IMG/VR virus record: IMGVR_UViG_3300046665_000548
Span: 62,001-126,000 of that record
DNA: 64,000 bases
Strand: one strand, 5' to 3'
Positions 804-49,169 of this stretch are shown here, piece by piece. Position 1 is the first letter of the stretch, and every line of letters begins with the position of its first letter. The position numbers and the translations under genes were made by a program. Under the pieces are notes generated by a model. The model was not told the DNA's origin, did no database searches, and was given only the letters and a program-made list of their open reading frames with translations.

Positions 804-2390
804 TTATACGACAACGGGCATCGCATCATCGTCAAAGAGTTCCGTGTCATGGATGTGTTCTTTAAGGTCTCCGACATCGGCCCCCCAACCAACAACAACG
901 TCCAAAATACGAATGCAAAGAAGAGTAGCCATCACAAGATCGTCGCTTTCTCCGCCCTTTGCTTTGAAGCTACTGTCGCCTGCGGATACAAAGAATTTCA
1001 GTTCTTTGATCAACTGTTTGCTCTTGACCTCCAAGCGATAGCTCTCGACAAGGCTCTTGAAACGGGCACAAGCCGATAGCTTCTTCTTCATATCGGTTGT
1101 GAAGCCTTTACGAAAACGTCTAGTCTGGCCTTTACGCTTGCGTTCCGAGACGAACATTCCGGGAAATCGCTCTTCCCCTGTGTCCTCGATGATCTGAAGG
1201 ACAGCCTCACCGATAGTGTTATTTTCAACGGTCCAGAATATTTCAGGTTCGCCGTGTTGTCCGGGATCATCTCGTAACGTGCTATCCAGGAAGTGAAGAA
1301 TTTGCATGAGCACGCGTATCTGCCCGCGAGCCGTGGTTAGGTTGTGCTGCCATTCGGCAACTTGAATCATTTCCGGAAGCTGAAAGACTTGAATAGCTGC
1401 ATGATCGCCACCCGTCCCAAGTGATGGATCGAGAGCCAGGATGTAAGTCTTGTTGGGCGTCGGATTTTGGAACCAGCGTACCGTGTTGGTGTAAAATTCC
1501 GGCTGCTCCGCTTTCATAGCTGACAAAAAGATAGGATTGATGAGGGTTTCATCGTCGGTAACGAAGTCACAGCAAAATTCTTGACGGAAACGCGCTTCTC
1601 CCAAGCTTTCGCGGTATTCCTTGGCCCATTCCTCATCGCGTTCAGGATGCTTGTCCCATGTTACCGAGATGGGGAAGAAGCCATTTCGACCAGCCTTTTC
1701 TCCAGTCGGATTACCGTACTCATCAGTGCTATCTAGTGCACCCTTCCAAATCTGGGCGAACTGATCTTCGTCGGTTCGCGGCGTCGATGTGATGATGCAG
1801 GAACCACCGGTCGAAAGAACTGGTCGGATGGAGGTCCAGAATTCGTTGGCCTTGTTTGGTGGCACGAACGCGAACTCGTCGCAGTAGAGCAGAGTGATCG
1901 AGAGACCACGACCGGCGTCCGAGGACGTAGCGCGCGATACAATCTTAGAGCCGTTGTCGAATGCAATCGTACCCTTGTTGTATTCGATGACACCAGCGCG
2001 AACCTCATCAGGAAGGTTCTCGTACGCGTATCGGATACGGTCCATAATTTCGAGCGCCTGGACCAGCTTGTTAGCTGTGATCAGGATGGTCGAATCAGGA
2101 GTGAACATCGCCTTCCACAGAATATAGGCCGCCGCGCATGTAGTTTTTCCCATTTGCCGCGCTGTGAGCGCGATGGCGTTTTTGTTTCCATGAAATGCGT
2201 TAATGAGATCGACTTGAAAAGGATATGGAACAAAAGGCTGCGCACCCTTCATGGGATGTTGAATCTTGACAAATTTCCGCATGAAATAGAGCGGGTCCTC
2301 CATACAGAGGACGAGATCAAGAAGACCTTCTTGGGTATAACTTGTCTTGGAACGCGGACGTTTTACTACGTCGTCTAATGATTTAGCCAT
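804..2390 (-). CDS. terL: Terminase large subunit (T4 gp17-like)
   Basis: Walker A ARQMGKTT, Walker B LLYCDEFAF, TSTP coupling motif, RNase H-like nuclease motifs LALDPS and DDLVMA. Confidence 0.95.
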   Translation of the reverse strand: MAKSLDDVVKRPRSKTSYTQEGLLDLVLCMEDPLYFMRKFVKIQHPMKGAQPFVPYPFQVDLINAFHGNKNAIALTARQMGKTTCAAAYILWKAMFTPDSTILITANKLVQALEIMDRIRYAYENLPDEVRAGVIEYNKGTIAFDNGSKIVSRATSSDAGRGLSITLLYCDEFAFVPPNKANEFWTSIRPVLSTGGSCIITSTPRTDEDQFAQIWKGALDSTDEYGNPTGEKAGRNGFFPISVTWDKHPERDEEWAKEYRESLGEARFRQEFCCDFVTDDETLINPIFLSAMKAEQPEFYTNTVRWFQNPTPNKTYILALDPSLGTGGDHAAIQVFQLPEMIQVAEWQHNLTTARGQIRVLMQILHFLDSTLRDDPGQHGEPEIFWTVENNTIGEAVLQIIEDTGEERFPGMFVSERKRKGQTRRFRKGFTTDMKKKLSACARFKSLVESYRLEVKSKQLIKELKFFVSAGDSSFKAKGGESDDLVMATLLCIRILDVVVGWGADVGDLKEHIHDTELFDDDAMPVVV

Positions 2391-37580: not shown

Positions 37581-37784
37581 TTACGTCCACCTCAACTGGA
37601 ATGCCAGCGCAAGCTTGTCATCGGAAATCCCGATCCGCACGCCCTTTACTAACCAAAGGTGCGGAAGCTCTTGGTCTTGTAACCATTCCGTATGATCCCG
37701 ACGATGTTGCCACATCGGAACGTAGAAAACATGCTTCCATTTTTTCGCTTTCGGCGCAGCTATGTATGCGAAAGTTTTTCTCAC
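37581..37784 (-). CDS. FKLRW-family small protein
   Basis: HTEWL...DDKLALAFQLRWT. Confidence 0.6.
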   Translation of the reverse strand: MRKTFAYIAAPKAKKWKHVFYVPMWQHRRDHTEWLQDQELPHLWLVKGVRIGISDDKLALAFQLRWT

Positions 37785-38806
37785 GCCACTCGCAGCTTAT
37801 TAGGCACTACCGCCTGACCCATCATCCAATGCTTGGCCGTCATCACGTGGCCCTTACGAACCCACTTGGCCGCCTTGTGGCGAAACTCGCTATAGGAGAA
37901 CGAATCAGCCACGCGAAGCACGTAGCCCTCATCCTTCTCCCAGGACAGCGCCTTCTCGATCTCATGCAACCGCTTCTCGTCGTAAATCCCGTCATACAAG
38001 ACACCGACCGGCGTGATCCCGAGTAACTTGAACCAGTCCAACGTATCGTCCCAGGAGAGACAGACATTGGCCTCGTTCCAGATCGAAAAACCAAGCAGGT
38101 AGCTTGGCAAATCTTCGTACGCGATAGAATGCTGCGCGAACAGGTTTTCCCCGCACACGCGCCAGCCTTCCGGAATATCGTGAGCGATACCGGACCAAAA
38201 GTTCTTAACCCAATCCCGTGACACATGATGCCGAGAATCCAGCGAACGAGCGTGGATGTAGTCGGTGTACATGGTCGTCTGTTCGCCATCCATCTTGGCG
38301 GTGACGATCACGCGCTGACCTTCGAAGGCGTGCATGCCCTCGATACGGCGATCATCGTCATTCATGCCGGGCGACCACGCAATGTGATTGGTGCGCGGAT
38401 ATTTGACGTACTGCGAGAACTCATGCAGGTGACCGGCGATGATCTTCTGAACCGATTCGTCATAGAACAGTTCGCCGCGAAGGCGGGTGCCATTCGGCAA
38501 GATCGGGTTGCCCCACTTGTCGATCTGCTGATCCGCATAGAGATGCGGCGGGACCACCTTCTTGGTGATCTTGGCTGCCAGCCGAACATCCTCAACTGCA
38601 ATATCCGTGCGCTCACAGGCGAGATGATGCTCTTCGCAAACACTCACGCCATTATCGAGATAATAGCCGCCGTCCACAAAGAGCCGTCGCTCGATGATGT
38701 GATGGGCATCCTTGGCTGGGGCATCGCAGAATACGCACTTATGGCCGTCGCGGGCGAAAACGCCGTTGCGAAAGTCGTCCCGCGTAAGGAGACGAGGGGT
38801 AGACAT
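37781..38806 (-). CDS. HNH-domain/RNA ligase fusion protein
   Basis: N-terminal RDGHKCVFC..DAHHI..NGVSVCEEHH; ligase motifs KYPRT, AKMDG, GENL, EGYVLR, AKWVR. Confidence 0.85.
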   Translation of the reverse strand: MSTPRLLTRDDFRNGVFARDGHKCVFCDAPAKDAHHIIERRLFVDGGYYLDNGVSVCEEHHLACERTDIAVEDVRLAAKITKKVVPPHLYADQQIDKWGNPILPNGTRLRGELFYDESVQKIIAGHLHEFSQYVKYPRTNHIAWSPGMNDDDRRIEGMHAFEGQRVIVTAKMDGEQTTMYTDYIHARSLDSRHHVSRDWVKNFWSGIAHDIPEGWRVCGENLFAQHSIAYEDLPSYLLGFSIWNEANVCLSWDDTLDWFKLLGITPVGVLYDGIYDEKRLHEIEKALSWEKDEGYVLRVADSFSYSEFRHKAAKWVRKGHVMTAKHWMMGQAVVPNKLRVA

Positions 38807-38872
38807 GGCTCGCCTCCTCAAAAATCGTTGGAATACCGTTTTACCAAAAAATAGCTTTTCGTCAAGTCTATT

Positions 38873-39415
38873 TTAGATACCGCCACCCGTCGTCAAAAGA
38901 CGGAGCGATTTGATGGCTCGAACGACTTCGGGCTTCTTTGTTAGCCTATCCAGCCCCGAAACTAGCGGAGCGGTCAATTCCTGGCTCCCACCGTGGTAAG
39001 AAAACGTCCGATGGCGCACATGACGCCAGAATTCCTCGGGAACGTCAGTGTCCGGGATTATCTTGGACCATCGCCAATCCTCTACCTCGCTACCAACACC
39101 GATTTTTCTGTTGTCTATCCGCTCGTTCTTCGAACGCCCATAACTATCCCGTAGCTCACGGAGGAATACAGCGTAAGTGTAATAGGTGAAGCCGTTTCCT
39201 TCCTCGAAGGTGTCGATCAGGTGCGCATCAAATCCAGATAGATCGATACCAGATTCTTCCTCAACCTCACGCAGCATGCAGGCCAGCGGGTCTTCTCCCG
39301 CTTCGGCCATCCCTCCGAAAGTCCCCCAAGTCAGCGGTTCGCTCTCGCCCATGCCGCGTAGGCAGGTCAAGACATGGCCATTCTGAAAGATAAGTGCACC
39401 GGCTCCAAAGCTCAT
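38873..39415 (-). CDS. NUDIX hydrolase
   Basis: GGMAEAGEDPLACMLREVEEESG. Confidence 0.85.
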   Translation of the reverse strand: MSFGAGALIFQNGHVLTCLRGMGESEPLTWGTFGGMAEAGEDPLACMLREVEEESGIDLSGFDAHLIDTFEEGNGFTYYTYAVFLRELRDSYGRSKNERIDNRKIGVGSEVEDWRWSKIIPDTDVPEEFWRHVRHRTFSYHGGSQELTAPLVSGLDRLTKKPEVVRAIKSLRLLTTGGGI

Positions 39416-39485: not shown

Positions 39486-40097
39486 ATGTCCATCAATAGA
39501 GATACCTTCTTCCAAACCATCCGAGGCAGTCTTTTCGGCGGGCATTTCACGCAAGATCAAGTAAATGGCCTCGATACGCTTACCGACGTGTGGGAAGCTA
39601 GCGGGTATACTGACAAGCGTTGGTTTGCTTACATGCTAGCTACGGCGTTTCATGAGACCGCCCAAACGATGCAGCCGATCCACGAACGCGGCGGCAACGC
39701 ATATTTCACCAAAATGTACGACATTCGCGGAAACCGTCCCTCTCTAGCTCGGCAGATGGGCAACATCAGCCCAGGCGATGGTGCCAAGTATTGCGGTCGC
39801 GGTTACGTGCAGTTGACATGGCGCGTCAATTATCACCGCATGGGTGAATTGCTTGGTCTCGATCTTGAGAACAATCCAGATTTGGCCATGCAGCCAGATG
39901 TCGCAGCTAAGGTGATGTTCGAGGGCATGACCAAGGGCGAAAGCCGAAAAGGCGACTTTACTGGCGTCTCTCTGGAAAAATATTTCAACAGCACCACCGA
40001 AGATTGGGTGAACGCTCGACGCATCATCAACGGGACCGATTGTGCCCAGGCCATTGCCGCCTATGCAAAGAAATTCAACGCAGCACTCTCTGCTTGA
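39486..40097 (+). CDS. Endolysin, glycoside hydrolase family 19
   Basis: [29 protein letters not shown]; late promoter. Confidence 0.88.
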
Positions 40098-42301: not shown

Positions 42302-43666
42302 ATGATCGAAAAACTAGACCATTGGTACGACGCGCAGATGCGTCGCTTCCTTGCCCAAATTGTCAGAGCCTTCTCTGGATTTCAATATACAACGGGCTGG
42401 AAGGACGGGCAGGCACCTCAGGCCATGCAGGTTCCGTGTCGTTTGGCGTCAACGGACCGAATGGTCGCGAATATGATCAAAAATGGTTCCGAGAACACCC
42501 TGAATACGGTCCCGATGATCGTCATCTATCAGACTGGTATTGCCGGTCGCCGCCAGGATGTGCAGAACCTTAACCACGTCGATTCCCGTGTTGTTCAAGA
42601 ACGCGCCATCGATCCGGTCAGCGGGAAGTACACACCCCTGAAGGGTCACGGCTACACCGTGCAGAGAATGATGCCACGTCCGTTCGAAATGACGGTCAAC
42701 GTTGATATCTGGACTTCAACCACAGATCAAAAGCATCAGCTATTCGAGCAGATCGCAACCATCTTCTATCCGGACATCTACATCCAGAATTCCGACAATG
42801 CTCTCGACTGGACCGCGATGACCACAATGGAATGGGTTGACTGCCAATGGTCGTCCAGAGCTATTCCGGTCGGCACTAACGACGAAATCGACGTGTTGAC
42901 GATCAGTTTCCGTCTTCCAATCTGGATTTCTCCTCCCGCCAAGGTCATGCAGATGAAGCTCATCGAGCAGGTCATCTCGAACATCCATGACGGTCGCCAC
43001 ACCGACGAGATCAGCGCAGACAATCATCTGTTCCGGCACATCACGACGCCGGGCAATCACTCGGTTCGTGTAGAAAACGGCAAAATACTTCTTCTCGGTC
43101 CAGAGGGGTCTGAGCATGGAGCAGACGGCAACACCTATACGTGGAAAAAGCTCATCGATCTGTACGGCGTTCTACGGCCGACACTGAGCACCATTCACCT
43201 TCTTACTAGTACCGATTTGGACGACCGCACGCGCGATGTCATCGGCACGATCCAGTACGACAACAACAATCCAAACGAAATCTTCTTCCAGATCGATCCG
43301 GACACTTTACCGCAGAATACGATGGACCCAATTAATGCGGTCATCGATCCGCGCGAGCATTGGGCCGGTAAGGGTCTTCCAGCCGCAACAGAAGGTCAGC
43401 GTTATCTTCTTCTGCACAGCATAATGCCAGACTCCATCGCCTGGGGCTCTCTCGAAGCAAACGAGAACAGCATCATTGAGTATCAGAACGGAGAGTGGAT
43501 CGTTGCTTTCGACGGCAAACCAGAAACCAACCCAACGCCACAACGCGTGCTGAACCTCGGTAGCTCACGCCAACTAAAGTTCGCTACCAGCGTTGAAGAC
43601 CAGTGGGAATGGTCGCTCGCCATCGACGGAACCTACTACCCCGGCACTTGGCGTCTCGACCTCTGA
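42302..43666 (+). CDS. Tail terminator/sheath stabilizer (T4 gp15-like) with a C-terminal extension
   Basis: WYDAQMRRF, DIWT...QK.QLFEQI...F.P, LTISFRLPIWISPPAKV. Confidence 0.8.
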   Translation: MIEKLDHWYDAQMRRFLAQIVRAFSGFQYTTGWKDGQAPQAMQVPCRLASTDRMVANMIKNGSENTLNTVPMIVIYQTGIAGRRQDVQNLNHVDSRVVQERAIDPVSGKYTPLKGHGYTVQRMMPRPFEMTVNVDIWTSTTDQKHQLFEQIATIFYPDIYIQNSDNALDWTAMTTMEWVDCQWSSRAIPVGTNDEIDVLTISFRLPIWISPPAKVMQMKLIEQVISNIHDGRHTDEISADNHLFRHITTPGNHSVRVENGKILLLGPEGSEHGADGNTYTWKKLIDLYGVLRPTLSTIHLLTSTDLDDRTRDVIGTIQYDNNNPNEIFFQIDPDTLPQNTMDPINAVIDPREHWAGKGLPAATEGQRYLLLHSIMPDSIAWGSLEANENSIIEYQNGEWIVAFDGKPETNPTPQRVLNLGSSRQLKFATSVEDQWEWSLAIDGTYYPGTWRLDL

Positions 43667-45472
43667 TGCAAATCTCGCAACAGATCGTTCAATAGTCTTG
43701 ACGTTGCGATTGCACAAATTCGCGATTTTACGGAACGAATAACCCAGTTCCGTTCGAATGCGATACCACATGTGACGGCGCGCACCCTGATTGGGATCGT
43801 GCCGCCCACCCTCGCGTAACAAGTCTTCAACAGTCAGGCCGTATTCATCGACAATCTCGTTCATGATCCGATGTCCGCCCGGCATCAGTCGATCCATTTC
43901 GGCGGCCCTCTTGGGATCAACAATCGCAATGTGCAGGCCGCTCTCTTTGTCCCTACACAGATCAGGACGCAGCCGCTGAGGCTCAATGCCCATCACGCGG
44001 CTCACAGTGGCCACCATCGGTTCGCTTACGTAGCCGCGCCTTGCCCACTGGAAAATCGCGCTGTCGTGCTTCACGCCCAACATAGCGGCAAGCCGCTGTC
44101 TGTTTCCAGCACGCGCAATGATCTCATCAAGCGCCGCTTTTGCGACAGAGATATCCTCGGGTTCCCAATGCAGAAACGGGCGAGGCTTCGATGACGAACC
44201 TCGACGCCGGAATTTGATGCGATCAGGAACGGCACCAGGAATATCCTTGTACGTCATACCACGGAGCATCGCCCCCATCGCCTGATTATCGATACCAAGC
44301 TCTTTCTCAAGAGTGCGCATCGTGACTTGACCAGTGGCATACATGCGCCGAGCCCAAATAACCTGCTCGTCAGTTAACAGTCTGAATTTACCCTTCGCAG
44401 AAACAGCTTCCGGCACAAAACCGTAGTGGTTTCCGGACAAGCATTGCTGAATATACCCTTTCGACAGTCCGTGAGCTTCCGCAAGTTGCTGCTGCGTGAC
44501 GTTGCCGTTCTGATAGACGAGCCGCATGAACAGCACTACCTCGGGCTCAAGACTTCTCTCAACTCCGGCAACGATGCGCTCGACCGGATTAGGAATTTTC
44601 GCAAACGGACCATGGCCAAGCAGCGCCTTACGGATCATCTGAGGATGCGAGTTATACTTGTCGGCCATCTCAAACAGAGTGACTTTACCCAGATTCACCC
44701 GGTAGAAATGACGCATTTCCTGGACTTCTCGTACTCGGAAATACGCAGCATTAGAGAGAACTTCCTCTGCCTCAAAACCTTTATATCGGTCGTACGGCTT
44801 TTCTCCCTTGAGCATTTTCTGTATCGTGCGGCGCTTAGTCTTAAGCTCAGCCGCAAGATGATCGAGAGCAATTCTTCCCTTGGCGGCTTCGTAACGCTGA
44901 CGCAAAGCCAAAACTGTATCTTTGTCAAACCTCACAGGAGGTGCGATCTCATCCGCAGTCAAAGCGCCAGGAATATTGCTGAACGAACCATTACCGAGCA
45001 ACAGGCTTTCAAAGTTGCGACCGGTCATGCCGTGCTTTCTTCCGAGCACAGCTAAGTGTCCGCCATACTTACGATAGCGATTACGGATAGCTCTGACCTG
45101 CTTGTCAGAAATGTCCGCAGCACGAAGACGGGGCAAAGCCTCCGCTACCTGCTTGTAAGTCTTCCCCGTCAGCAGATCGCGAACAGCACCCCGCGTAATA
45201 CCGAGTTCGGATTCAAGTTGTTCAGTAGTCTTCTCGCCCTTTTTGAAAGCTAGTCGCGAAGCGATAACCGTTTCGTCACTAAACGATGTGGATGGTAGAA
45301 CCGATACCGGATCAGGAACATGCGCATATGACTTGCCAAGCAGCAGACTATTGACTGAGGATCGAACCATGGAGAGTTCAGCCATAAGTTGCTGAACAGA
45401 CTTTTCTCCATTTTTCACGGCCTGACGCGCCGCCGATACCACCTCGTCGCTGAGTTTGCGCTTGCCCATCAT
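43574..45472 (-). CDS. Multi-HTH DNA-binding protein: 7 HTH repeats, a Cro/YdaS-like HTH and a DnaA C-terminal-like domain
   Basis: Repeats of L(S/T)DE.V..xR....G......LA...G.....I...L.G..Y..(V/I)P; LRPDL; ARRHMWY..R..LGYSF.KIA...NR..TI. Confidence 0.75.
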   Translation of the reverse strand: MMGKRKLSDEVVSAARQAVKNGEKSVQQLMAELSMVRSSVNSLLLGKSYAHVPDPVSVLPSTSFSDETVIASRLAFKKGEKTTEQLESELGITRGAVRDLLTGKTYKQVAEALPRLRAADISDKQVRAIRNRYRKYGGHLAVLGRKHGMTGRNFESLLLGNGSFSNIPGALTADEIAPPVRFDKDTVLALRQRYEAAKGRIALDHLAAELKTKRRTIQKMLKGEKPYDRYKGFEAEEVLSNAAYFRVREVQEMRHFYRVNLGKVTLFEMADKYNSHPQMIRKALLGHGPFAKIPNPVERIVAGVERSLEPEVVLFMRLVYQNGNVTQQQLAEAHGLSKGYIQQCLSGNHYGFVPEAVSAKGKFRLLTDEQVIWARRMYATGQVTMRTLEKELGIDNQAMGAMLRGMTYKDIPGAVPDRIKFRRRGSSSKPRPFLHWEPEDISVAKAALDEIIARAGNRQRLAAMLGVKHDSAIFQWARRGYVSEPMVATVSRVMGIEPQRLRPDLCRDKESGLHIAIVDPKRAAEMDRLMPGGHRIMNEIVDEYGLTVEDLLREGGRHDPNQGARRHMWYRIRTELGYSFRKIANLCNRNVKTIERSVARFASEVETPSAGVVGSVDGERPFPLVFNAGSEL

Positions 45473-46053
45473 TATTCCCAGTTTAGATTGAACGTACTGT
45501 TGTCGAACGCAGTAGTAGCTTGCATCAATCGCGCACGAGTCGCGTCGGCTTCTTCTTTCGAGACGATCTCGAAGTAATGCTTCGCCGCCTTCTGCTTGTA
45601 ATGGTTTTCGATCTTGCCTCCGGGCTGCATCATGCGGTCGTAAGCGTAATTGCGAACAATTTCTCGAACCTCTTCGCGCGCGACAATGATGTCCCATTTC
45701 TTGATGAGAAACGGACCACGCCCGGCAGTAATGGCTTTCGAGACCAAATGAGGAAGCGGCTGAAGCGTCCATTCAGTTCTGGGAGTTGCCTCCCAAACAT
45801 CGTCGCCCTCCCAGTCTTCAAGTACCGATCCATCGTGATTGCCGTCGCGAAAGCTGAAGGTGAATTCTTTGTCGCCAAGCGTGATAATGCCGTGCGCACG
45901 TGCATTAATCGCGTCGATGCGATCATGTTCCAAGATCATGATACAATCGTGCTTTCCCCACTGGCCCGTAGCTTCAGCAAGCATCATCAGCACATCTTCG
46001 CGCTGATCTTCGGGAACATCTCGCTCAAAACGTTCTTGTGCAGTCGTTGTCAT
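45472..46053 (-). CDS. Hypothetical protein
   Basis: GAGGGG RBS; coupled to the next gene. Confidence 0.65.
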   Translation of the reverse strand: MTTTAQERFERDVPEDQREDVLMMLAEATGQWGKHDCIMILEHDRIDAINARAHGIITLGDKEFTFSFRDGNHDGSVLEDWEGDDVWEATPRTEWTLQPLPHLVSKAITAGRGPFLIKKWDIIVAREEVREIVRNYAYDRMMQPGGKIENHYKQKAAKHYFEIVSKEEADATRARLMQATTAFDNSTFNLNWE

Positions 46054-46062
46054 GTGTTCCCC

Positions 46063-46323
46063 TCAGCGTCTACGTTGCGGCTCTTCGCCATCAATTCTAG
46101 TCGTGACGTGCATACTCGATGAGATATGCAGTATTTCCCTGTCCTCGCCGTGCCGTCCCTGATCCCATTTCATAGAGATCGTATCCGACCATGGGTCTTT
46201 CCAACCCGGACGAAAGCTCATGCTGACGTTATCAACGTTGAACGTCTTGCATACCGCAGCAATGGCGCGGCAAAACTCGACGTGATGATCTGGAATTGAA
46301 ATTTTTGGTACTGTTTCGGTCAT
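46063..46323 (-). CDS. Hypothetical protein
   Basis: ORF upstream in the same operon. Confidence 0.55.
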   Translation of the reverse strand: MTETVPKISIPDHHVEFCRAIAAVCKTFNVDNVSMSFRPGWKDPWSDTISMKWDQGRHGEDREILHISSSMHVTTRIDGEEPQRRR

Positions 46324-46441
46324 GGTTTAACGGTATATCGACAGTCCTGAGCCGTAAACCAAAAAATATTCGCTTTCTTTGCATTTTTCAGTTGTAACGG
46401 TTTGGGGAACTGTGTATAAATACGTTCTCTTGATTGGTTAC

Positions 46442-46516
46442 GCGAATGTAATTCAGTGGTAGAATGCCTCGTTGCCAACGAGGTCGCCGTGGGTTCGAGC
46501 CCCACCGTTCGCTCCA
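46442..46516 (+). tRNA. tRNA-Gly(GCC)
   Basis: Cloverleaf; anticodon arm CCTCG-TTGCCAA-CGAGG; GGTTCGA; encoded CCA. Confidence 0.92.
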
Positions 46517-46533
46517 GTCAGAAAGTTGTTTGT

Positions 46534-46610
46534 CGCGGGGTGGAGCAGCCCGGTAGCTCGTTAGGCTCATAACCTAAAGGTCGGTGGTTCAAATCCATCT
46601 CCCGCAACCA
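46534..46610 (+). tRNA. Initiator tRNA-fMet(CAT)
   Basis: CGCGGGG start with C1:A72 mismatch; TTAGG-CTCATAA-CCTAA; CCA end. Confidence 0.92.
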
Positions 46611-46655
46611 AACATTGAAAGAAATTGCCGACCTCAAAGGGTTGGCCAAGAGTGA

Positions 46656-46732
46656 CGCGGGATGGAGCAGTCAGGTAGCTCGTCGGGTTCATATCCCGGA
46701 GGTCGGTGGATCGAAGCCATCTCCCGCAACCA
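46656..46732 (+). tRNA. Second, variant initiator-type tRNA-Met(CAT)
   Basis: CGCGGGA start; TCGGG-TTCATAT-CCCGG; T-loop ATCGAAG; CCA end. Confidence 0.85.
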
Positions 46733-46766
46733 TTAAACGGTCTCCTTGTCCCGATAGACAGGAAAT

Positions 46767-46842
46767 GGGGCCTTAGCTCAGTTGAGAGAGCGATTCGCTG
46801 GCAGTGAATAGGTCGTCAGTTTGATCCTGACAGGCTCCACCA
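46767..46842 (+). tRNA. tRNA-Ala(GGC)
   Basis: G3:U70 pair; loop CTGGCAG; atypical T-loop TTTGATC; CCA end. Confidence 0.85.
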
Positions 46843-46850
46843 CATAGTTC

Positions 46851-46925
46851 GGGCTAGTAGTTCAGCGGGAGAACGTTGCCTTTGCAAGGCAAATGTCGGG
46901 GGTTCAATTCCCTCCTGGTCCACCA
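46851..46925 (+). tRNA. tRNA-Ala(TGC)
   Basis: G3:U70 pair; TTGCC-TTTGCAA-GGCAA; CCA end. Confidence 0.88.
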
Positions 46926-47118
46926 CACTGCGCCTGTTTGACCTTCGGGAAGACAGGCTTTTATTACGGATGAGACCGGTTTACACCTACGGGGCCAAAC
47001 CGGGCCAATCTCACCGTAAGGCCCCTGGGGCTTAGTCCAGGCGCGGCCGGAGCGAAATCCGGTAGAGGGCTGCACGGGACGCCGGATAGTCTGCGGAGGG
47101 GTGGGAACCCCTTCCAAT

Positions 47119-47194
47119 GCGAACGTAGCTCAGTTGGTAGAGCGTCTGATTTCCAATCAGAATGTCGTGAGTTCGAATCTCATCGTTCGCTCCA
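47119..47194 (+). tRNA. tRNA-Gly(TCC)
   Basis: TCTGA-TTTCCAA-TCAGA; GTTCGAAT; CCA end. Confidence 0.92.
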
Positions 47195-47734
47195 TTTTTT
47201 CTTCCATATCTCAATGTAATTCCTAACCTTCTCTTCAACGAGAGGGCGGAATTTGCTGTGCCAATACTGATGGTGCGTAGGGCACATAGGTATTAGGTTC
47301 GCTGGATCATTGTTCTGATGATTTTCATCAAGATGATGCACGGAAACGATATTTCTCTCATCACACACTACGCATTGTTTTTCGTGATGCCCGAAGCAGA
47401 TAGTGGTGTATTTTGTGATCTCGATATTTCTTCTGGATGCCCAGTCGAGTCCTGATCCTCTGTGATTTGAGCAACTGCGGCTACAAAAATACTTTTCCTT
47501 TAGAGGATACTGTTTTTCTCTTTCCCTTATCGAAAAATCCTTCGCGCAAGCATGGCACGCTACTGTGTAGGTTTTCATATCCCCAAGCTGTTTGCTGATG
47601 TATCGCCGTTGGGCATCCGCAAGTGCTTGAGTATCGTTCCTCTTTGGATTATGAGAACACCAACGAGAATGATTGGCTTTCTGACTGGTCGAGGAATATT
47701 CGAAGGTTTCGTCGCAATGAGCACATTTCCACAT
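47180..47734 (-). CDS. HNH homing endonuclease with Zn-finger modules
   Basis: CxxC motifs, FCSRSC, VHHLDENHQNNDPANLIPMCPTHH; TAAATA 4 nt upstream. Confidence 0.88.
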   Translation of the reverse strand: MWKCAHCDETFEYSSTSQKANHSRWCSHNPKRNDTQALADAQRRYISKQLGDMKTYTVACHACAKDFSIREREKQYPLKEKYFCSRSCSNHRGSGLDWASRRNIEITKYTTICFGHHEKQCVVCDERNIVSVHHLDENHQNNDPANLIPMCPTHHQYWHSKFRPLVEEKVRNYIEIWKKKWSER

Positions 47735-47836
47735 ACCTTATTTATGTGGAGTGCTAAGCTATCGCTTAATCAGATGCGATATCGATGTATTCCTAGCTAG
47801 GGGGTGTGTACTTGGCGCGAATATACGGCTTATCAT

Positions 47837-48061
47837 ATGCGTACTGATCTCACCGAAAAAGAGCACAAGTTGCTTCACCTGCTTTGGAATAATGGCCTTA
47901 AGGGTTCTATGTGTTGGATTCGTCGGGATGAAGATGAGGACACGAATTCCAGTTTAACATCTCTCATTGAGCGTGGATTAGTGGCGCGAAAAGATAACGG
48001 CTGGTTCATCTATATTACTGAAGACGGCGAGTTTTTGATTCGCTTCTACGGGAAACCCTGA
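47837..48061 (+). CDS. MRTDL winged-helix paralog 1
   Basis: MRTDLT..E..LL...SLIERGLV...ITEDG...R.YGKP. Confidence 0.75.
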   Translation: MRTDLTEKEHKLLHLLWNNGLKGSMCWIRRDEDEDTNSSLTSLIERGLVARKDNGWFIYITEDGEFLIRFYGKP

Positions 48062-48518: not shown

Positions 48519-48739
48519 TGCGAACTGATCTCACCGATGATGAGCACTGGTATCTTATCTACGTCGATTTTCATTCTGATCAAGGAAGAAAGTTTATCGG
48601 GTGGGTTTCTTCTTTCCACAAATCCGTAGACGCTTTGGTTGAGCGCGGCCTGATCGAGAAAACGGAAGACAAAAACAGTGTTTGGATTAAATCCACTCCA
48701 GATGGCGTACTCTTGGCCCGACTCTACGGAGAGCCGTAA
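48518..48739 (+). CDS. MRTDL winged-helix paralog 4
   Basis: Same pattern. Confidence 0.75.
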   Translation: MRTDLTDDEHWYLIYVDFHSDQGRKFIGWVSSFHKSVDALVERGLIEKTEDKNSVWIKSTPDGVLLARLYGEP

Positions 48740-48951
48740 TGCGCACTGATCTCACCCACCCGGAGCACATGCTACTCCAGGAAATATCGGATCATAGTGG
48801 TTTTGCTTGGCTTTCTCCGGATGATGACAAGGAAACGAATTCTTGCATAGCATCTCTCATTGATCGTGGATTGGTGAGGATACAAAATGTCTGGTTCATC
48901 TATATTACTGATGATGGCGAGCTTTTGCTTCGTATGTACGGAGAGCCCTGA
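48739..48951 (+). CDS. MRTDL winged-helix paralog 5
   Basis: Same pattern. Confidence 0.75.
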   Translation: MRTDLTHPEHMLLQEISDHSGFAWLSPDDDKETNSCIASLIDRGLVRIQNVWFIYITDDGELLLRMYGEP

Positions 48952-49169
48952 TGCGCACTGATCTCACCGAAATGGAGCACAAGTTGCTTCACCACATATC
49001 GCGAGTCGATAAGCAAGGTTTCGCTTGGCTTTCTCGTGACGAAGATGAGGTCACGAATTCTTGTCTGTCATCTCTCGTTGATCGTGGATTAGTGACGAGA
49101 GAAAATGGCTGGTTCATCTCCATTACCGAGGACGGCAAGCTTTTGATTCGTATGTACGGGAAGCCGTAG
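48951..49169 (+). CDS. MRTDL winged-helix paralog 6
   Basis: Same pattern; close to paralog 1. Confidence 0.75.
   Translation: MRTDLTEMEHKLLHHISRVDKQGFAWLSRDEDEVTNSCLSSLVDRGLVTRENGWFISITEDGKLLIRMYGKP

What the first reader, a model, noticed from the sequence alone, without database searches (positions are those of the whole stretch)
43574..45472. Unusual DNA-binding protein: seven tandem HTH repeats plus Cro-like and DnaA domain IV-like modules
Seen: seven repeats of about 52-65 aa resembling the HTH tails of phage HNH endonucleases but with no nuclease domain, then a Cro/YdaS-like unit ending LRPDL, then a DnaA C-terminal-like unit. The 3' end overlaps the convergent gp15-like gene by 93 nt. 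Inference: a long-footprint modular DNA binder, such as an origin or DnaA-box competitor, a genome organiser or a master regulator.
Basis: partly seen in the sequence, partly recalled or inferred. Interest (0 to 1): 0.6.

Follow-up and report, generated by a model that had tools for sequence, protein, structure and literature searches.

The report
Nuclease-free nine-module HTH DNA binder
A 607-kb soil-type phage encodes a 632-residue protein made only of DNA-binding modules (seven helix-turn-helix repeats of the homing-endonuclease-tail kind, one Cro-type and one DnaA-domain-IV-type module); it belongs to an uncharacterised locus kept beside the tail gene gp15 in related huge phages, and its DNA target and role are unknown.

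Summary
Window 43574..45472 (-) encodes a 632-aa basic protein (pI 9.8). It has seven tri-helical HTH repeats (aa 1-436), a Cro/YdaS-type module (aa 437-519, ending LRPDL) and a DnaA-domain-IV-type module (aa 520-606). No nuclease domain is present. The last 26 aa lie in the 93-nt overlap with convergent gp15 and are constrained by the gp15 frame, not their own.

- **Repeat family.** The repeat is the HTH unit of the DNA-binding tails of phage HNH_3/NUMOD4 and GIY-YIG endonucleases. Nuclease-free arrays of 2-8 units form a rare, unnamed metagenomic family: 224 hits among 1.84 billion representatives.
- **Conserved locus.** In seven independent loci, arrays spread over one to three genes sit convergent with gp15. 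Where upstream sequence exists, they run divergent from a conserved tRNA cluster. Each locus carries 7 to 17 HTH-type modules.
- **Selection.** dN/dS against the closest homologue is 0.11.
- **Cultured relatives.** Phosso and Atu_ph07 lack the repeat.
- **DnaA-like module.** It has lost five of the six DnaA-box base-contact residues, so a DnaA-box competitor is unlikely.

Best reading: a sequence-specific, long-footprint DNA binder acting on the phage genome, probably regulatory or architectural. The target is unknown. I class it as a new variant of a known kind, of moderate interest.

The parts
43574..45472 (-). Whole gene: 632-aa HTH-array protein (P0001)
   Evidence: The start is set by the TAATG overlap with the upstream ORF and by homologue P0002.
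45284..45472 (-). HTH repeat 1 (aa 1-63). It is a lineage-specific duplicate of repeat 2 and is absent from P0002.
45113..45283 (-). HTH repeat 2 (aa 64-120)
44930..45112 (-). HTH repeat 3 (aa 121-181)
44741..44929 (-). HTH repeat 4 (aa 182-244)
44552..44740 (-). HTH repeat 5 (aa 245-307)
44378..44551 (-). HTH repeat 6 (aa 308-365). This is the 'PEVVLFMRL' type, conserved as a pair with repeat 7 across the family.
44165..44377 (-). HTH repeat 7 plus a basic linker (aa 366-436). It gives the best match to endonuclease tails.
43916..44164 (-). Cro/YdaS-type all-alpha HTH module (aa 437-519; LRPDL at aa 501-505)
43655..43915 (-). DnaA-domain-IV-type HTH module (aa 520-606). Its recognition motif is NRNVKTIERS where DnaA has GRDHTTV.
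43574..43654 (-). Disordered C-terminal tail (aa 607-632) and stop codon, lying inside the overlap with gp15. It shows no sign of selection in its own frame.
   Evidence: pLDDT below 50; pS 0.05 and pN 0.23 against L002
42302..43666 (+). Convergent T4 gp15-type tail sheath stabiliser gene; the conserved neighbour of the array locus
45472..46323 (-). Two upstream co-oriented ORFs (193 aa at 45472..46053; 86 aa at 46063..46323). They have no family match and are absent from L002. They probably share an operon with the array gene.
46324..46441 (.). Divergent control region. It holds a conserved sigma-70-like tRNA promoter (TTG.AA.G ... TATAAATA on the + strand) and contains TTATACACA.
46442..47194 (+). 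tRNA cluster Gly(GCC)-Met-Met-Ala(GGC)-Ala(UGC)-Gly(UCC). It runs divergent from the array operon, and this layout is kept in related loci.

Best explanation
The gene encodes a nuclease-free, purely modular DNA-binding protein of a huge phage related to Agrobacterium phage Atu_ph07 and Sinorhizobium phage Phosso.

Nine small helical DNA-reading modules are strung on flexible, partly basic linkers:
- seven tri-helical HTH units of the kind that form the DNA-binding tails of phage HNH and GIY-YIG homing endonucleases;
- one Cro-type HTH;
- one DnaA-domain-IV-type HTH.

Shown: the modules, their folds, their homology, the absence of a nuclease, purifying selection, and a conserved genomic position.

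Inferred:
- Each module puts its recognition helix into a major groove and reads a few base pairs.
- The linkers, which carry the conserved Y-K-x-[VI]-P-G-A-V-P motif, follow the backbone or minor groove as in endonuclease tails and paired or Tc3-type bipartite domains.
- One molecule therefore reads either one very long composite site (several tens of base pairs) or a cluster of sites.

The most likely role is sequence-specific regulation or architectural organisation of the phage's own DNA. One candidate target is the control region it shares with the divergent tRNA cluster. Host replication control is less likely. Related phages achieve the same total with two or three adjacent array genes, so the functional unit is the locus, with 7-17 HTH modules, rather than this exact fusion.
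For: Architecture and folds.

No nuclease. The modules, the linkers and the low-confidence tail account for the whole length.

Family: 224 relatives among 1.84e9 representatives, nearly all arrays of 2-8 units. Over 407 units the scaffold positions are nearly invariant (R10 95%, G40 95%, V6 86%). Positions 31-36, at the start of helix 3, are the most variable.

Repeat individuality: each repeat is kept individually between the window and L002. Helix 3 identity is 56-78% between orthologues and 23% between paralogues.

Selection: dN/dS is 0.11 overall and 0.07-0.14 per module.

Charge: pI is 9.8.

Conserved locus: the arrays are convergent with gp15 in the window, L002, L003, L004, L005/6, L007/8 and L012, while gp15 identity falls to about 50%. 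The divergent tRNA cluster is kept.

Precedents for tandem HTHs reading long sites:
- the TnsD C-terminal HTHs (PMC10293859);
- the bipartite Tc3, paired and CENP-B domains that top the Foldseek list.

Precedent for a DnaA-like DNA-binding domain in a phage-type transcription activator: GafA of RcGTA (PMC9638019).
Against: No DNA target was found:
- there are no iteron-like or periodic repeats near the gene or in the intergenic regions;
- the one abundant genomic motif is an ordinary promoter consensus, and it is not found in front of this operon.

No expression data exist. The position among structural genes fits a classical early regulator poorly. The variable repeat number and the fission and fusion of genes would also fit a fast-evolving conflict function. 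DNA binding itself is inferred, not measured.
Confidence: 0.55

Rival explanations
1. This is a derivative of a homing endonuclease that kept only the targeting part. It would occupy the recognition site of a related endonuclease, for example in the neighbouring tRNA region. That occupancy would either protect the phage from cleavage by competing phages, or guide a free-standing nuclease such as the adjacent small HNH protein (47180..47734, -) in trans.
For: The repeat is the HTH of endonuclease tails. A GIY-YIG enzyme with seven such repeats exists (P0046). A free-standing HNH gene flanks the tRNA cluster in the window, L005 and L007. The tRNA adjacency is conserved.
Against: L002, the closest relative, has no HNH gene at that place. 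The HNH protein and the array are separated and on different strands. Purifying selection and positional conservation over about 50% gp15 divergence are not typical of selfish-element debris. No interaction was tested.
Confidence: 0.2
2. This is a genome-architecture or packaging factor. A single chain or locus presents many HTHs, much as an oligomeric small terminase ring or a nucleoid protein does. It would wrap or mark phage DNA, for example for pac-site recognition or condensation of a 607-kb genome.
For: In T4 the gene after gp15 is the small terminase gene 16 (established gene order, from my own knowledge). The array locus is gp15's constant neighbour. Single repeats resemble a small-terminase HTH at Z 4.8.
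Against: The orientation is convergent, not co-linear. The large terminase lies about 41 kb away (window 804..2390). No oligomerisation domain is present. The fold match is generic for HTH. Cultured relatives package DNA without this locus.
Confidence: 0.12
3. This is a host-directed factor. The DnaA-domain-IV-like module competes with host DnaA for DnaA boxes at oriC or DnaA-regulated promoters, and the array adds affinity.
For: The fold and remote homology to DnaA domain IV are real. A TTATACACA box lies in the control region of the window and L002.
Against: Five of the six base-contact residues differ in P0001, and P0002 differs again (RRDPKTV) (residue list from PMC7561715). The module is missing from most loci of the family. 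Box frequency is at chance. There is no skew feature.
Confidence: 0.06
4. This is a decaying or non-functional remnant, a pseudogenised endonuclease tail array with no role.
For: There is no catalytic domain. The C-terminal tail is unselected. Repeat number varies between loci.
Against: The 1.9-kb frame is intact. dN/dS is 0.11 across all modules. The AF2 modules are confident. Synteny is conserved in seven loci.
Confidence: 0.03

Closest known systems
DNA-binding tails of phage HNH_3/NUMOD4 and GIY-YIG homing endonucleases (I-HmuI-, I-TevI- and Seg-type enzymes)
   Same: It has the same HTH unit by sequence (phrog_6156, phrog_59; HNH_3 in 35 of 150 relatives) and by fold (BFVD hits). It follows the same principle of small modules on linkers reading a long site. 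One relative couples GIY-YIG to seven repeats.
   Different: It has no nuclease domain. Its seven repeats compare with the two to four usual in the HNH_3-bearing relatives. Cro-type and DnaA-IV-type modules are added. It holds a conserved, non-mobile-looking position in the genome and is under purifying selection.
Bipartite or multipartite HTH DNA-binding domains: Tc3/mariner transposase, Pax paired domain, CENP-B(1-129), c-Myb R1R2R3, and the Tn7 TnsD C-terminal HTH array
   Same: Tandem tri-helical HTHs joined by linkers each read a subsite. These domains are the top Foldseek and VIA matches of the two-repeat model. TnsD uses several HTHs to read attTn7 (PMC10293859).
   Different: The matches are weak: E at least 0.17 and Z at most 5.8, which shows a shared fold only. 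Those proteins have two to four modules and an effector domain. This one has nine modules and no effector.
Cro / YdaS family (Pfam PF15943, PF14549; Xylella prophage Xfaso 1 Cro 3bd1, P22 Cro 1rzs)
   Same: The module profile hits 3bd1 at 2e-12, including the terminal LRPD[LV]F motif. Relatives pass the Pfam cut-off. The predicted fold is all-alpha.
   Different: Here it is a domain inside a 632-aa protein, not a free protein of about 70 aa. Its own Pfam score is just under the cut-off (28 against 30). Its dimerisation and operator are unknown.
DnaA domain IV (PF08299; 1j1v, 3pvp) and DnaA-like DNA-binding domains of phage-type regulators such as GafA of RcGTA
   Same: The fold matches (TM 0.62-0.64, rmsd 2.1-2.4 A). 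Remote homology runs through P0148. GafA shows that such a domain can serve a phage-derived transcription activator (PMC9638019).
   Different: It has no AAA+ or other DnaA domains. The DnaA-box-reading residues are not conserved. No sequence link to GafA was tested.

Membership tests
Homing endonuclease (HNH_3/NUMOD4 or GIY-YIG type) | HTH/NUMOD-type modular DNA-binding tail | tested here: met
   phrog_6156 at 1.4e-9 and phrog_59 at 1e-5. Relatives carry HNH_3, NUMOD4, NUMOD3 or GIY-YIG. BFVD gives endonuclease matches.
Homing endonuclease (HNH_3/NUMOD4 or GIY-YIG type) | Catalytic nuclease domain | tested here: not met
   P0001 has no nuclease family in Pfam or PHROGs. All 632 aa are assigned to HTH modules, linkers and a disordered tail.
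Tri-helical HTH DNA-binding domain (each of the seven repeats) | Three-helix fold with helix 2-turn-helix 3, matching known HTH domains | tested here: met
   AF2 gives three helices per repeat, with pLDDT 89.7 for R6-R7. VIA Z is 4.5-5.8 to Hin, DeoR, GcrA, CENP-B, Tc3, Myb and sigma region 4. Pfam HTH_3 and MarR_2 score above the cut-off in repeat 6. Relatives reach E 1e-28.
Tri-helical HTH DNA-binding domain (each of the seven repeats) | Actual DNA binding | not testable with these tools
   Only indirect evidence: pI 9.8 and a hypervariable recognition helix on a conserved scaffold.
Cro / YdaS (PF15943, PF14549) | Sequence match at the family threshold | tested here: inconclusive
   The protein's own score is 28.0 bits against a cut-off of 30. 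The module's relatives P0047, P0073, P0124, P0011 and P0010 pass. Profile A5 hits Cro 3bd1 at 2e-12.
Cro / YdaS (PF15943, PF14549) | Small free-standing repressor acting at an operator | tested here: not met
   The module is an internal domain (aa 437-519) of a 632-aa protein. No operator was identified.
DnaA domain IV (PF08299) | Sequence match at the family threshold | tested here: not met
   It scores 18.1-20.8 bits against a cut-off of 31.5. Homology is supported only transitively, through P0148 (60.5 bits) and profile A4 against 3pvp at 7e-6.
DnaA domain IV (PF08299) | Domain IV fold | tested here: met
   Foldseek 3pvp_A gives probability 1.00, TM 0.64 and rmsd 2.1 A over 73 columns. 1j1v_A gives probability 1.00 and TM 0.62.
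DnaA domain IV (PF08299) | DnaA-box base-contact residues R399, P423, D433, H434, T435, H439 (PMC7561715) | tested here: not met
   The aligned residues are R557 (possibly kept), R581, N590, V591, K592 and R596.
DnaA initiator | AAA+ domain III and N-terminal domains | tested here: not met
   Bac_DnaA and AAA give no hit. The rest of the protein is HTH repeats.
Small terminase | N-terminal HTH plus an oligomerisation core, adjacent to the large terminase | tested here: not met
   There is only a generic HTH fold match (Z 4.8). The large terminase lies about 41 kb away. No terminase family hit passes its cut-off (Terminase_5 scores 13.9 bits against 20.3, E 0.054).

The most novel reading that the evidence does not exclude
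The tRNA-to-gp15 'HTH-array locus' may be a previously undescribed system of a clade of huge phages. Its 7-17 individually specialised HTH modules would together read a very long or multipartite DNA address with a modular, evolvable code: a conserved scaffold with hypervariable positions in the recognition helix. It would be a natural nuclease-free counterpart of homing-endonuclease targeting, used for phage genome control or inter-phage competition. It might also be usable as a programmable DNA-binding scaffold.
Probability: 0.12. Interest if true: 0.75.

Novelty: new variant of a known kind. Interest (0 to 1): 0.45.

Why it matters
Huge phages carry many unexplained genes. This one shows a clear design made only of DNA-reading modules. 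It appears to be derived from homing-endonuclease tails, is kept under selection, and holds a fixed genomic position across diverged relatives, while the number of modules and genes varies.

If its targets can be mapped, it would show how a 0.6-Mb phage addresses long or multiple DNA sites. It would also show whether endonuclease targeting domains were domesticated for regulation or for competition between phages. The module-per-subsite layout could interest protein engineers.

The finding is not a new fold or a new principle. Tandem HTH readers and nuclease-free HTH proteins are known, and no function has been demonstrated here.

Tried and rejected
- **INPHARED phages.** tblastn of P0001 found no match. 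Megablast of the 10-kb surroundings found only a tRNA.
- **IMG/VR scans.** Scans with P0001 and with A2 confirmed no relatives. A7 was too variable to search with.
- **Word search with the C-terminal 196 aa.** Nothing was found, so no free Cro+DnaA-C architecture was detected within that length range.
- **Repeat profile against PDB by sequence.** Only insignificant hits.
- **Foldseek of the full-length model.** Uninformative, apart from the DnaA DNA-binding-domain rows.
- **Search for a DNA target.**
  - Tandem repeats, direct and inverted repeats around the gene gave nothing periodic.
  - Alignment of the control regions of four loci showed only the tRNA promoter conserved.
  - Genome-wide k-mers gave only a sigma-70-like promoter consensus, absent in front of this operon.
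- **Origin hypothesis.** Cumulative GC skew of the whole genome has no global extreme at the locus. There are only local turns, which may follow gene orientation. DnaA-box count is at chance.
- **Upstream 193-aa ORF.** It is not the 193-aa gene seen upstream in L005. The aligned fragments of that gene ('MDENHHNN') suggest an HNH protein.
- **Sequencing runs.** One soil metagenome holds 5% of the sampled words and there is no RNA run.
- **ESM Atlas.** It gave only leads consistent with the above.
Full report
**1. The gene**

The window is positions 62001-126000 of a 607,744-bp IMG/VR virus record. The finding's coordinates are right. The ORF at 43574..45472 (-) encodes 632 aa, stored as P0001.

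Its ATG shares one base with the TAA of an upstream 193-aa ORF (TAATG). That fits translational coupling in an operon that starts with an 86-aa ORF at 46323. The longer 732-aa reading runs out of frame through the 193-aa ORF and has no homology there. The closest homologue begins directly at the first repeat.

**2. Seven repeats**

Residues 1-63, 64-120, 121-181, 182-244, 245-307, 308-365 and 366-436 align with invariant V, R, G, L, G (A1). A profile of them finds exactly these seven places in the whole 607-kb genome, at E 1e-21 to 7e-26, and nothing else.

AlphaFold2 gives every repeat three helices of about 12, 8 and 9 residues, separated by low-confidence linkers:
- the full-length model has mean pLDDT 74.6, above 90 in repeats 3 and 5-7;
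- the two-repeat model R6-R7, built with 32 homologous pairs, has pLDDT 89.7.

Fold comparison of that model gave these results:
- Single repeats superpose on the Hin recombinase, DeoR/SorC, GcrA, CENP-B, Tc3, c-Myb, KorB and sigma-region-4 HTHs at Z 4.5-5.8. That is modest, as expected for 50-residue domains.
- The pair resembles bipartite domains (SETMAR/Mos1, Pax6, CENP-B, Tc3, DUX4), but weakly, at E 0.17 or more.
- Among viral models it matches HNH and intron-associated endonucleases and 'HTH DNA-binding domain proteins'. Four matches have E at most 1e-3.

By sequence, repeat 6 passes Pfam HTH_3 and MarR_2. Repeat 7 matches the tail of phrog_6156 'endonuclease' at 1.4e-9, and repeats 1-2 match phrog_59 'HNH endonuclease'. 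No nuclease family matches anywhere in the protein.

**3. The two C-terminal modules**

Cro/YdaS-type module:
- Residues 448-505 score 28 bits on YdaS_toxin, against a cut-off of 30.
- Relatives of this module pass the cut-off: a free 73-aa protein, a tandem pair, and the tails of other arrays.
- A profile of eleven such modules hits the all-alpha Cro of Xylella prophage Xfaso 1 (3bd1) at 2e-12. The match includes the terminal LRPDxF. P22 Cro is also hit.

DnaA-domain-IV-type module:
- Residues 535-594 score only 18-21 bits on Bac_DnaA_C, against a cut-off of 31.5.
- The exhaustive search links this segment to P0148 at E 7e-5 over 1.84e9 proteins. P0148 is a 159-aa protein that scores 60.5 bits on Bac_DnaA_C.
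- A three-sequence profile hits M. tuberculosis DnaA-DBD at 7e-6.
- The AF2 model superposes on 3pvp and 1j1v with probability 1.0, TM 0.62-0.64 and rmsd 2.1-2.4 A.

The fold and remote homology are therefore real. The DNA-reading residues are not. DnaA reads its box with R399, P423, D433, H434, T435 and H439 (PMC7561715, citing Fujikawa 2003; also PMC9638019). The aligned residues here are R557, R581, N590, V591, K592 and R596. P0148 keeps D-H-T-H.

**4. The overlap with gp15**

The downstream convergent gene at 42302..43666 (+) is a T4 gp15-type tail sheath stabiliser (PF16724 at 3e-16; phrog_11196 at 2e-96). The overlap is 93 nt.

The last 26 residues of P0001 lie inside it and are predicted disordered. 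Compared with the closest homologue, this segment has almost no synonymous change (pS 0.05) but many non-synonymous ones (pN 0.23). The rest of the gene shows dN/dS of 0.11 with saturated dS. The tail is therefore constrained by the gp15 reading frame on the other strand. It is probably a run-on, not a functional part. More distant loci have no such overlap.

**5. Relatives**

The word search found three relatives. The exhaustive search found 224 at E at most 1e-3, 49 at E at most 1e-10 and 7 at E at most 1e-30. All ten that were looked up are unnamed metagenomic proteins.

A repeat HMM shows that nearly all are arrays of 2-8 units. Of the 150 best:
- 35 carry HNH_3 and 19 carry a YdaS/Cro module;
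- others carry NUMOD4, NUMOD3 or GIY-YIG;
- one GIY-YIG enzyme has seven repeats (P0046).

The closest relatives (P0002-P0035) are mostly arrays without any other domain.

Over 407 aligned units the scaffold is nearly invariant (R10 95%, G40 95%, V6 86%, L/F1 96%). The first residues of helix 3 (positions 31-36) are the most variable.

Between the window and its closest homologue each repeat is kept individually. Helix 3 identity is 56-78% between orthologues and 23% between paralogues. Repeat 1 is an extra copy of repeat 2.

**6. A conserved locus**

In every contig with enough sequence, the array gene or genes lie convergent with a gp15 homologue.

| Locus | HTH-type modules and genes |
|---|---|
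| Window | 7 repeats + Cro + DnaA-IV, one gene |
| L002 | 6 repeats + Cro + DnaA-IV, one gene |
| L003 | 8 + 4 repeats, two genes |
| L004 | 7 + 5 + 5 repeats, three genes |
| L005/6 | 4 repeats + Cro, then 2 repeats |
| L007/8 | 6 + 4 + 5 repeats, three genes |
| L012 | at least 1 + 4 + 5 repeats |

gp15 identity to the window is 89% in L002 and about 50% in the others.

On the other side, a tRNA cluster starting Gly(GCC)-Met-...-Ala-Ala is transcribed divergently in the window, L002, L004, L005 and L007. A small HNH gene follows it in the window, L005 and L007, but not in L002. The shared control region conserves only a sigma-70-like tRNA promoter.

By TerL (61% and 54% identity) and gp15 (42% and 38%), the nearest cultured phages are Sinorhizobium phage Phosso and Agrobacterium phage Atu_ph07. 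Their gp15 neighbourhoods have no array. The repeat profile finds nothing in either genome, whereas the same query found all seven repeats in the window's own genome. The locus therefore belongs to an uncultured subclade.

**7. What it does**

Shown:
- nine HTH-type modules and no catalytic domain;
- a basic protein (pI 9.8);
- purifying selection;
- a fixed genomic position.

Inferred: it is a sequence-specific DNA binder whose modules each read a subsite. It would cover a long composite site or a cluster of sites, in the manner of endonuclease tails, paired or Tc3 domains and the HTH array of TnsD (PMC10293859).

I favour a regulatory or architectural role on phage DNA. GafA of RcGTA is a precedent for a DnaA-like DNA-binding domain in a phage-type activator (PMC9638019). 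No target was found, though.

Rivals:
- site occupation or targeting related to homing endonucleases at the tRNA region;
- a packaging or organiser role;
- competition with host DnaA, which is the least supported;
- a dead remnant, which is disfavoured and by the synteny.

**8. Verdict**

The protein is best filed as a nuclease-free variant of the modular HTH tails of phage homing endonucleases, enlarged and fused to Cro-type and DnaA-IV-type modules. It is part of a conserved but plastic HTH-array locus of a clade of huge phages. It is not a member of the homing endonuclease, Cro repressor or DnaA families in the strict sense. The function remains to be measured.

Noticed in passing
window 8874(-), 11000(+), 28940(-), 55639(+), 60779(+), 61765(+); about 30 good copies in G000: A strongly conserved promoter-like motif, AAAAACGCTTGACG-N13-15-TGGTAnnnT (A-tract, -35, extended -10), recurs through the 607-kb genome. 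It is probably the phage's host-sigma-70 (early) promoter class. No copy lies in front of the HTH-array operon.
   Followed up: partly
window 46442-47194 (+) and L002, L004, L005, L007: The tRNA cluster Gly(GCC)-Met-(Met)-Ala(GGC)-Ala(UGC)...Gly(UCC) keeps its order and its divergent layout next to the array locus in all related contigs. A small zinc-finger/HNH endonuclease gene (window 47180..47734, -) overlaps the last tRNA by 15 nt.
   Followed up: partly
window 46411-46419 (-): TTATACACA, an exact match to the DnaA-box consensus TTWTNCACA, overlaps the -10 element of the conserved tRNA promoter in the window and L002, the two loci whose protein has the DnaA-IV-like module. L005 and L007 differ at these bases. 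This could be coincidence, because the box count in the window is at chance.
   Followed up: partly
window 43574-43666: The overlap of the two convergent genes shows frame-specific constraint. The array protein's tail has pS 0.05 and pN 0.23, while gp15 is 89% identical between the two phages. No terminator-like site was found between the genes.
   Followed up: yes
window 48725-49159 and ORF 47804..48061: A 218-bp unit occurs twice in tandem (79% matches). It encodes small paralogous proteins that begin MRTDLT.(K/T)EHKLLH, and a third, more diverged copy lies just upstream. Their function is unknown.
   Followed up: no
window 37781..38821 (-): An RNA ligase (PF09414; phrog_24030 at 1e-135) has an N-terminal 80 aa that match HNH endonuclease families. 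A NUDIX gene (38873..39415) and a glycoside-hydrolase-19-type endolysin (39486..40097) lie next to it.
   Followed up: no
L013 (P0046) and P0128: P0046 is a GIY-YIG endonuclease with seven of the same HTH repeats. P0128 is a 1257-aa protein with many HTH units and no nuclease hit. Long HTH arrays therefore occur both with and without nucleases.
   Followed up: partly
window 804..2390 (-); L009, L010: TerL and gp15 place the phage near Sinorhizobium phage Phosso (469 kb) and Agrobacterium phage Atu_ph07 (490 kb). This suggests an alphaproteobacterial host.
   Followed up: partly
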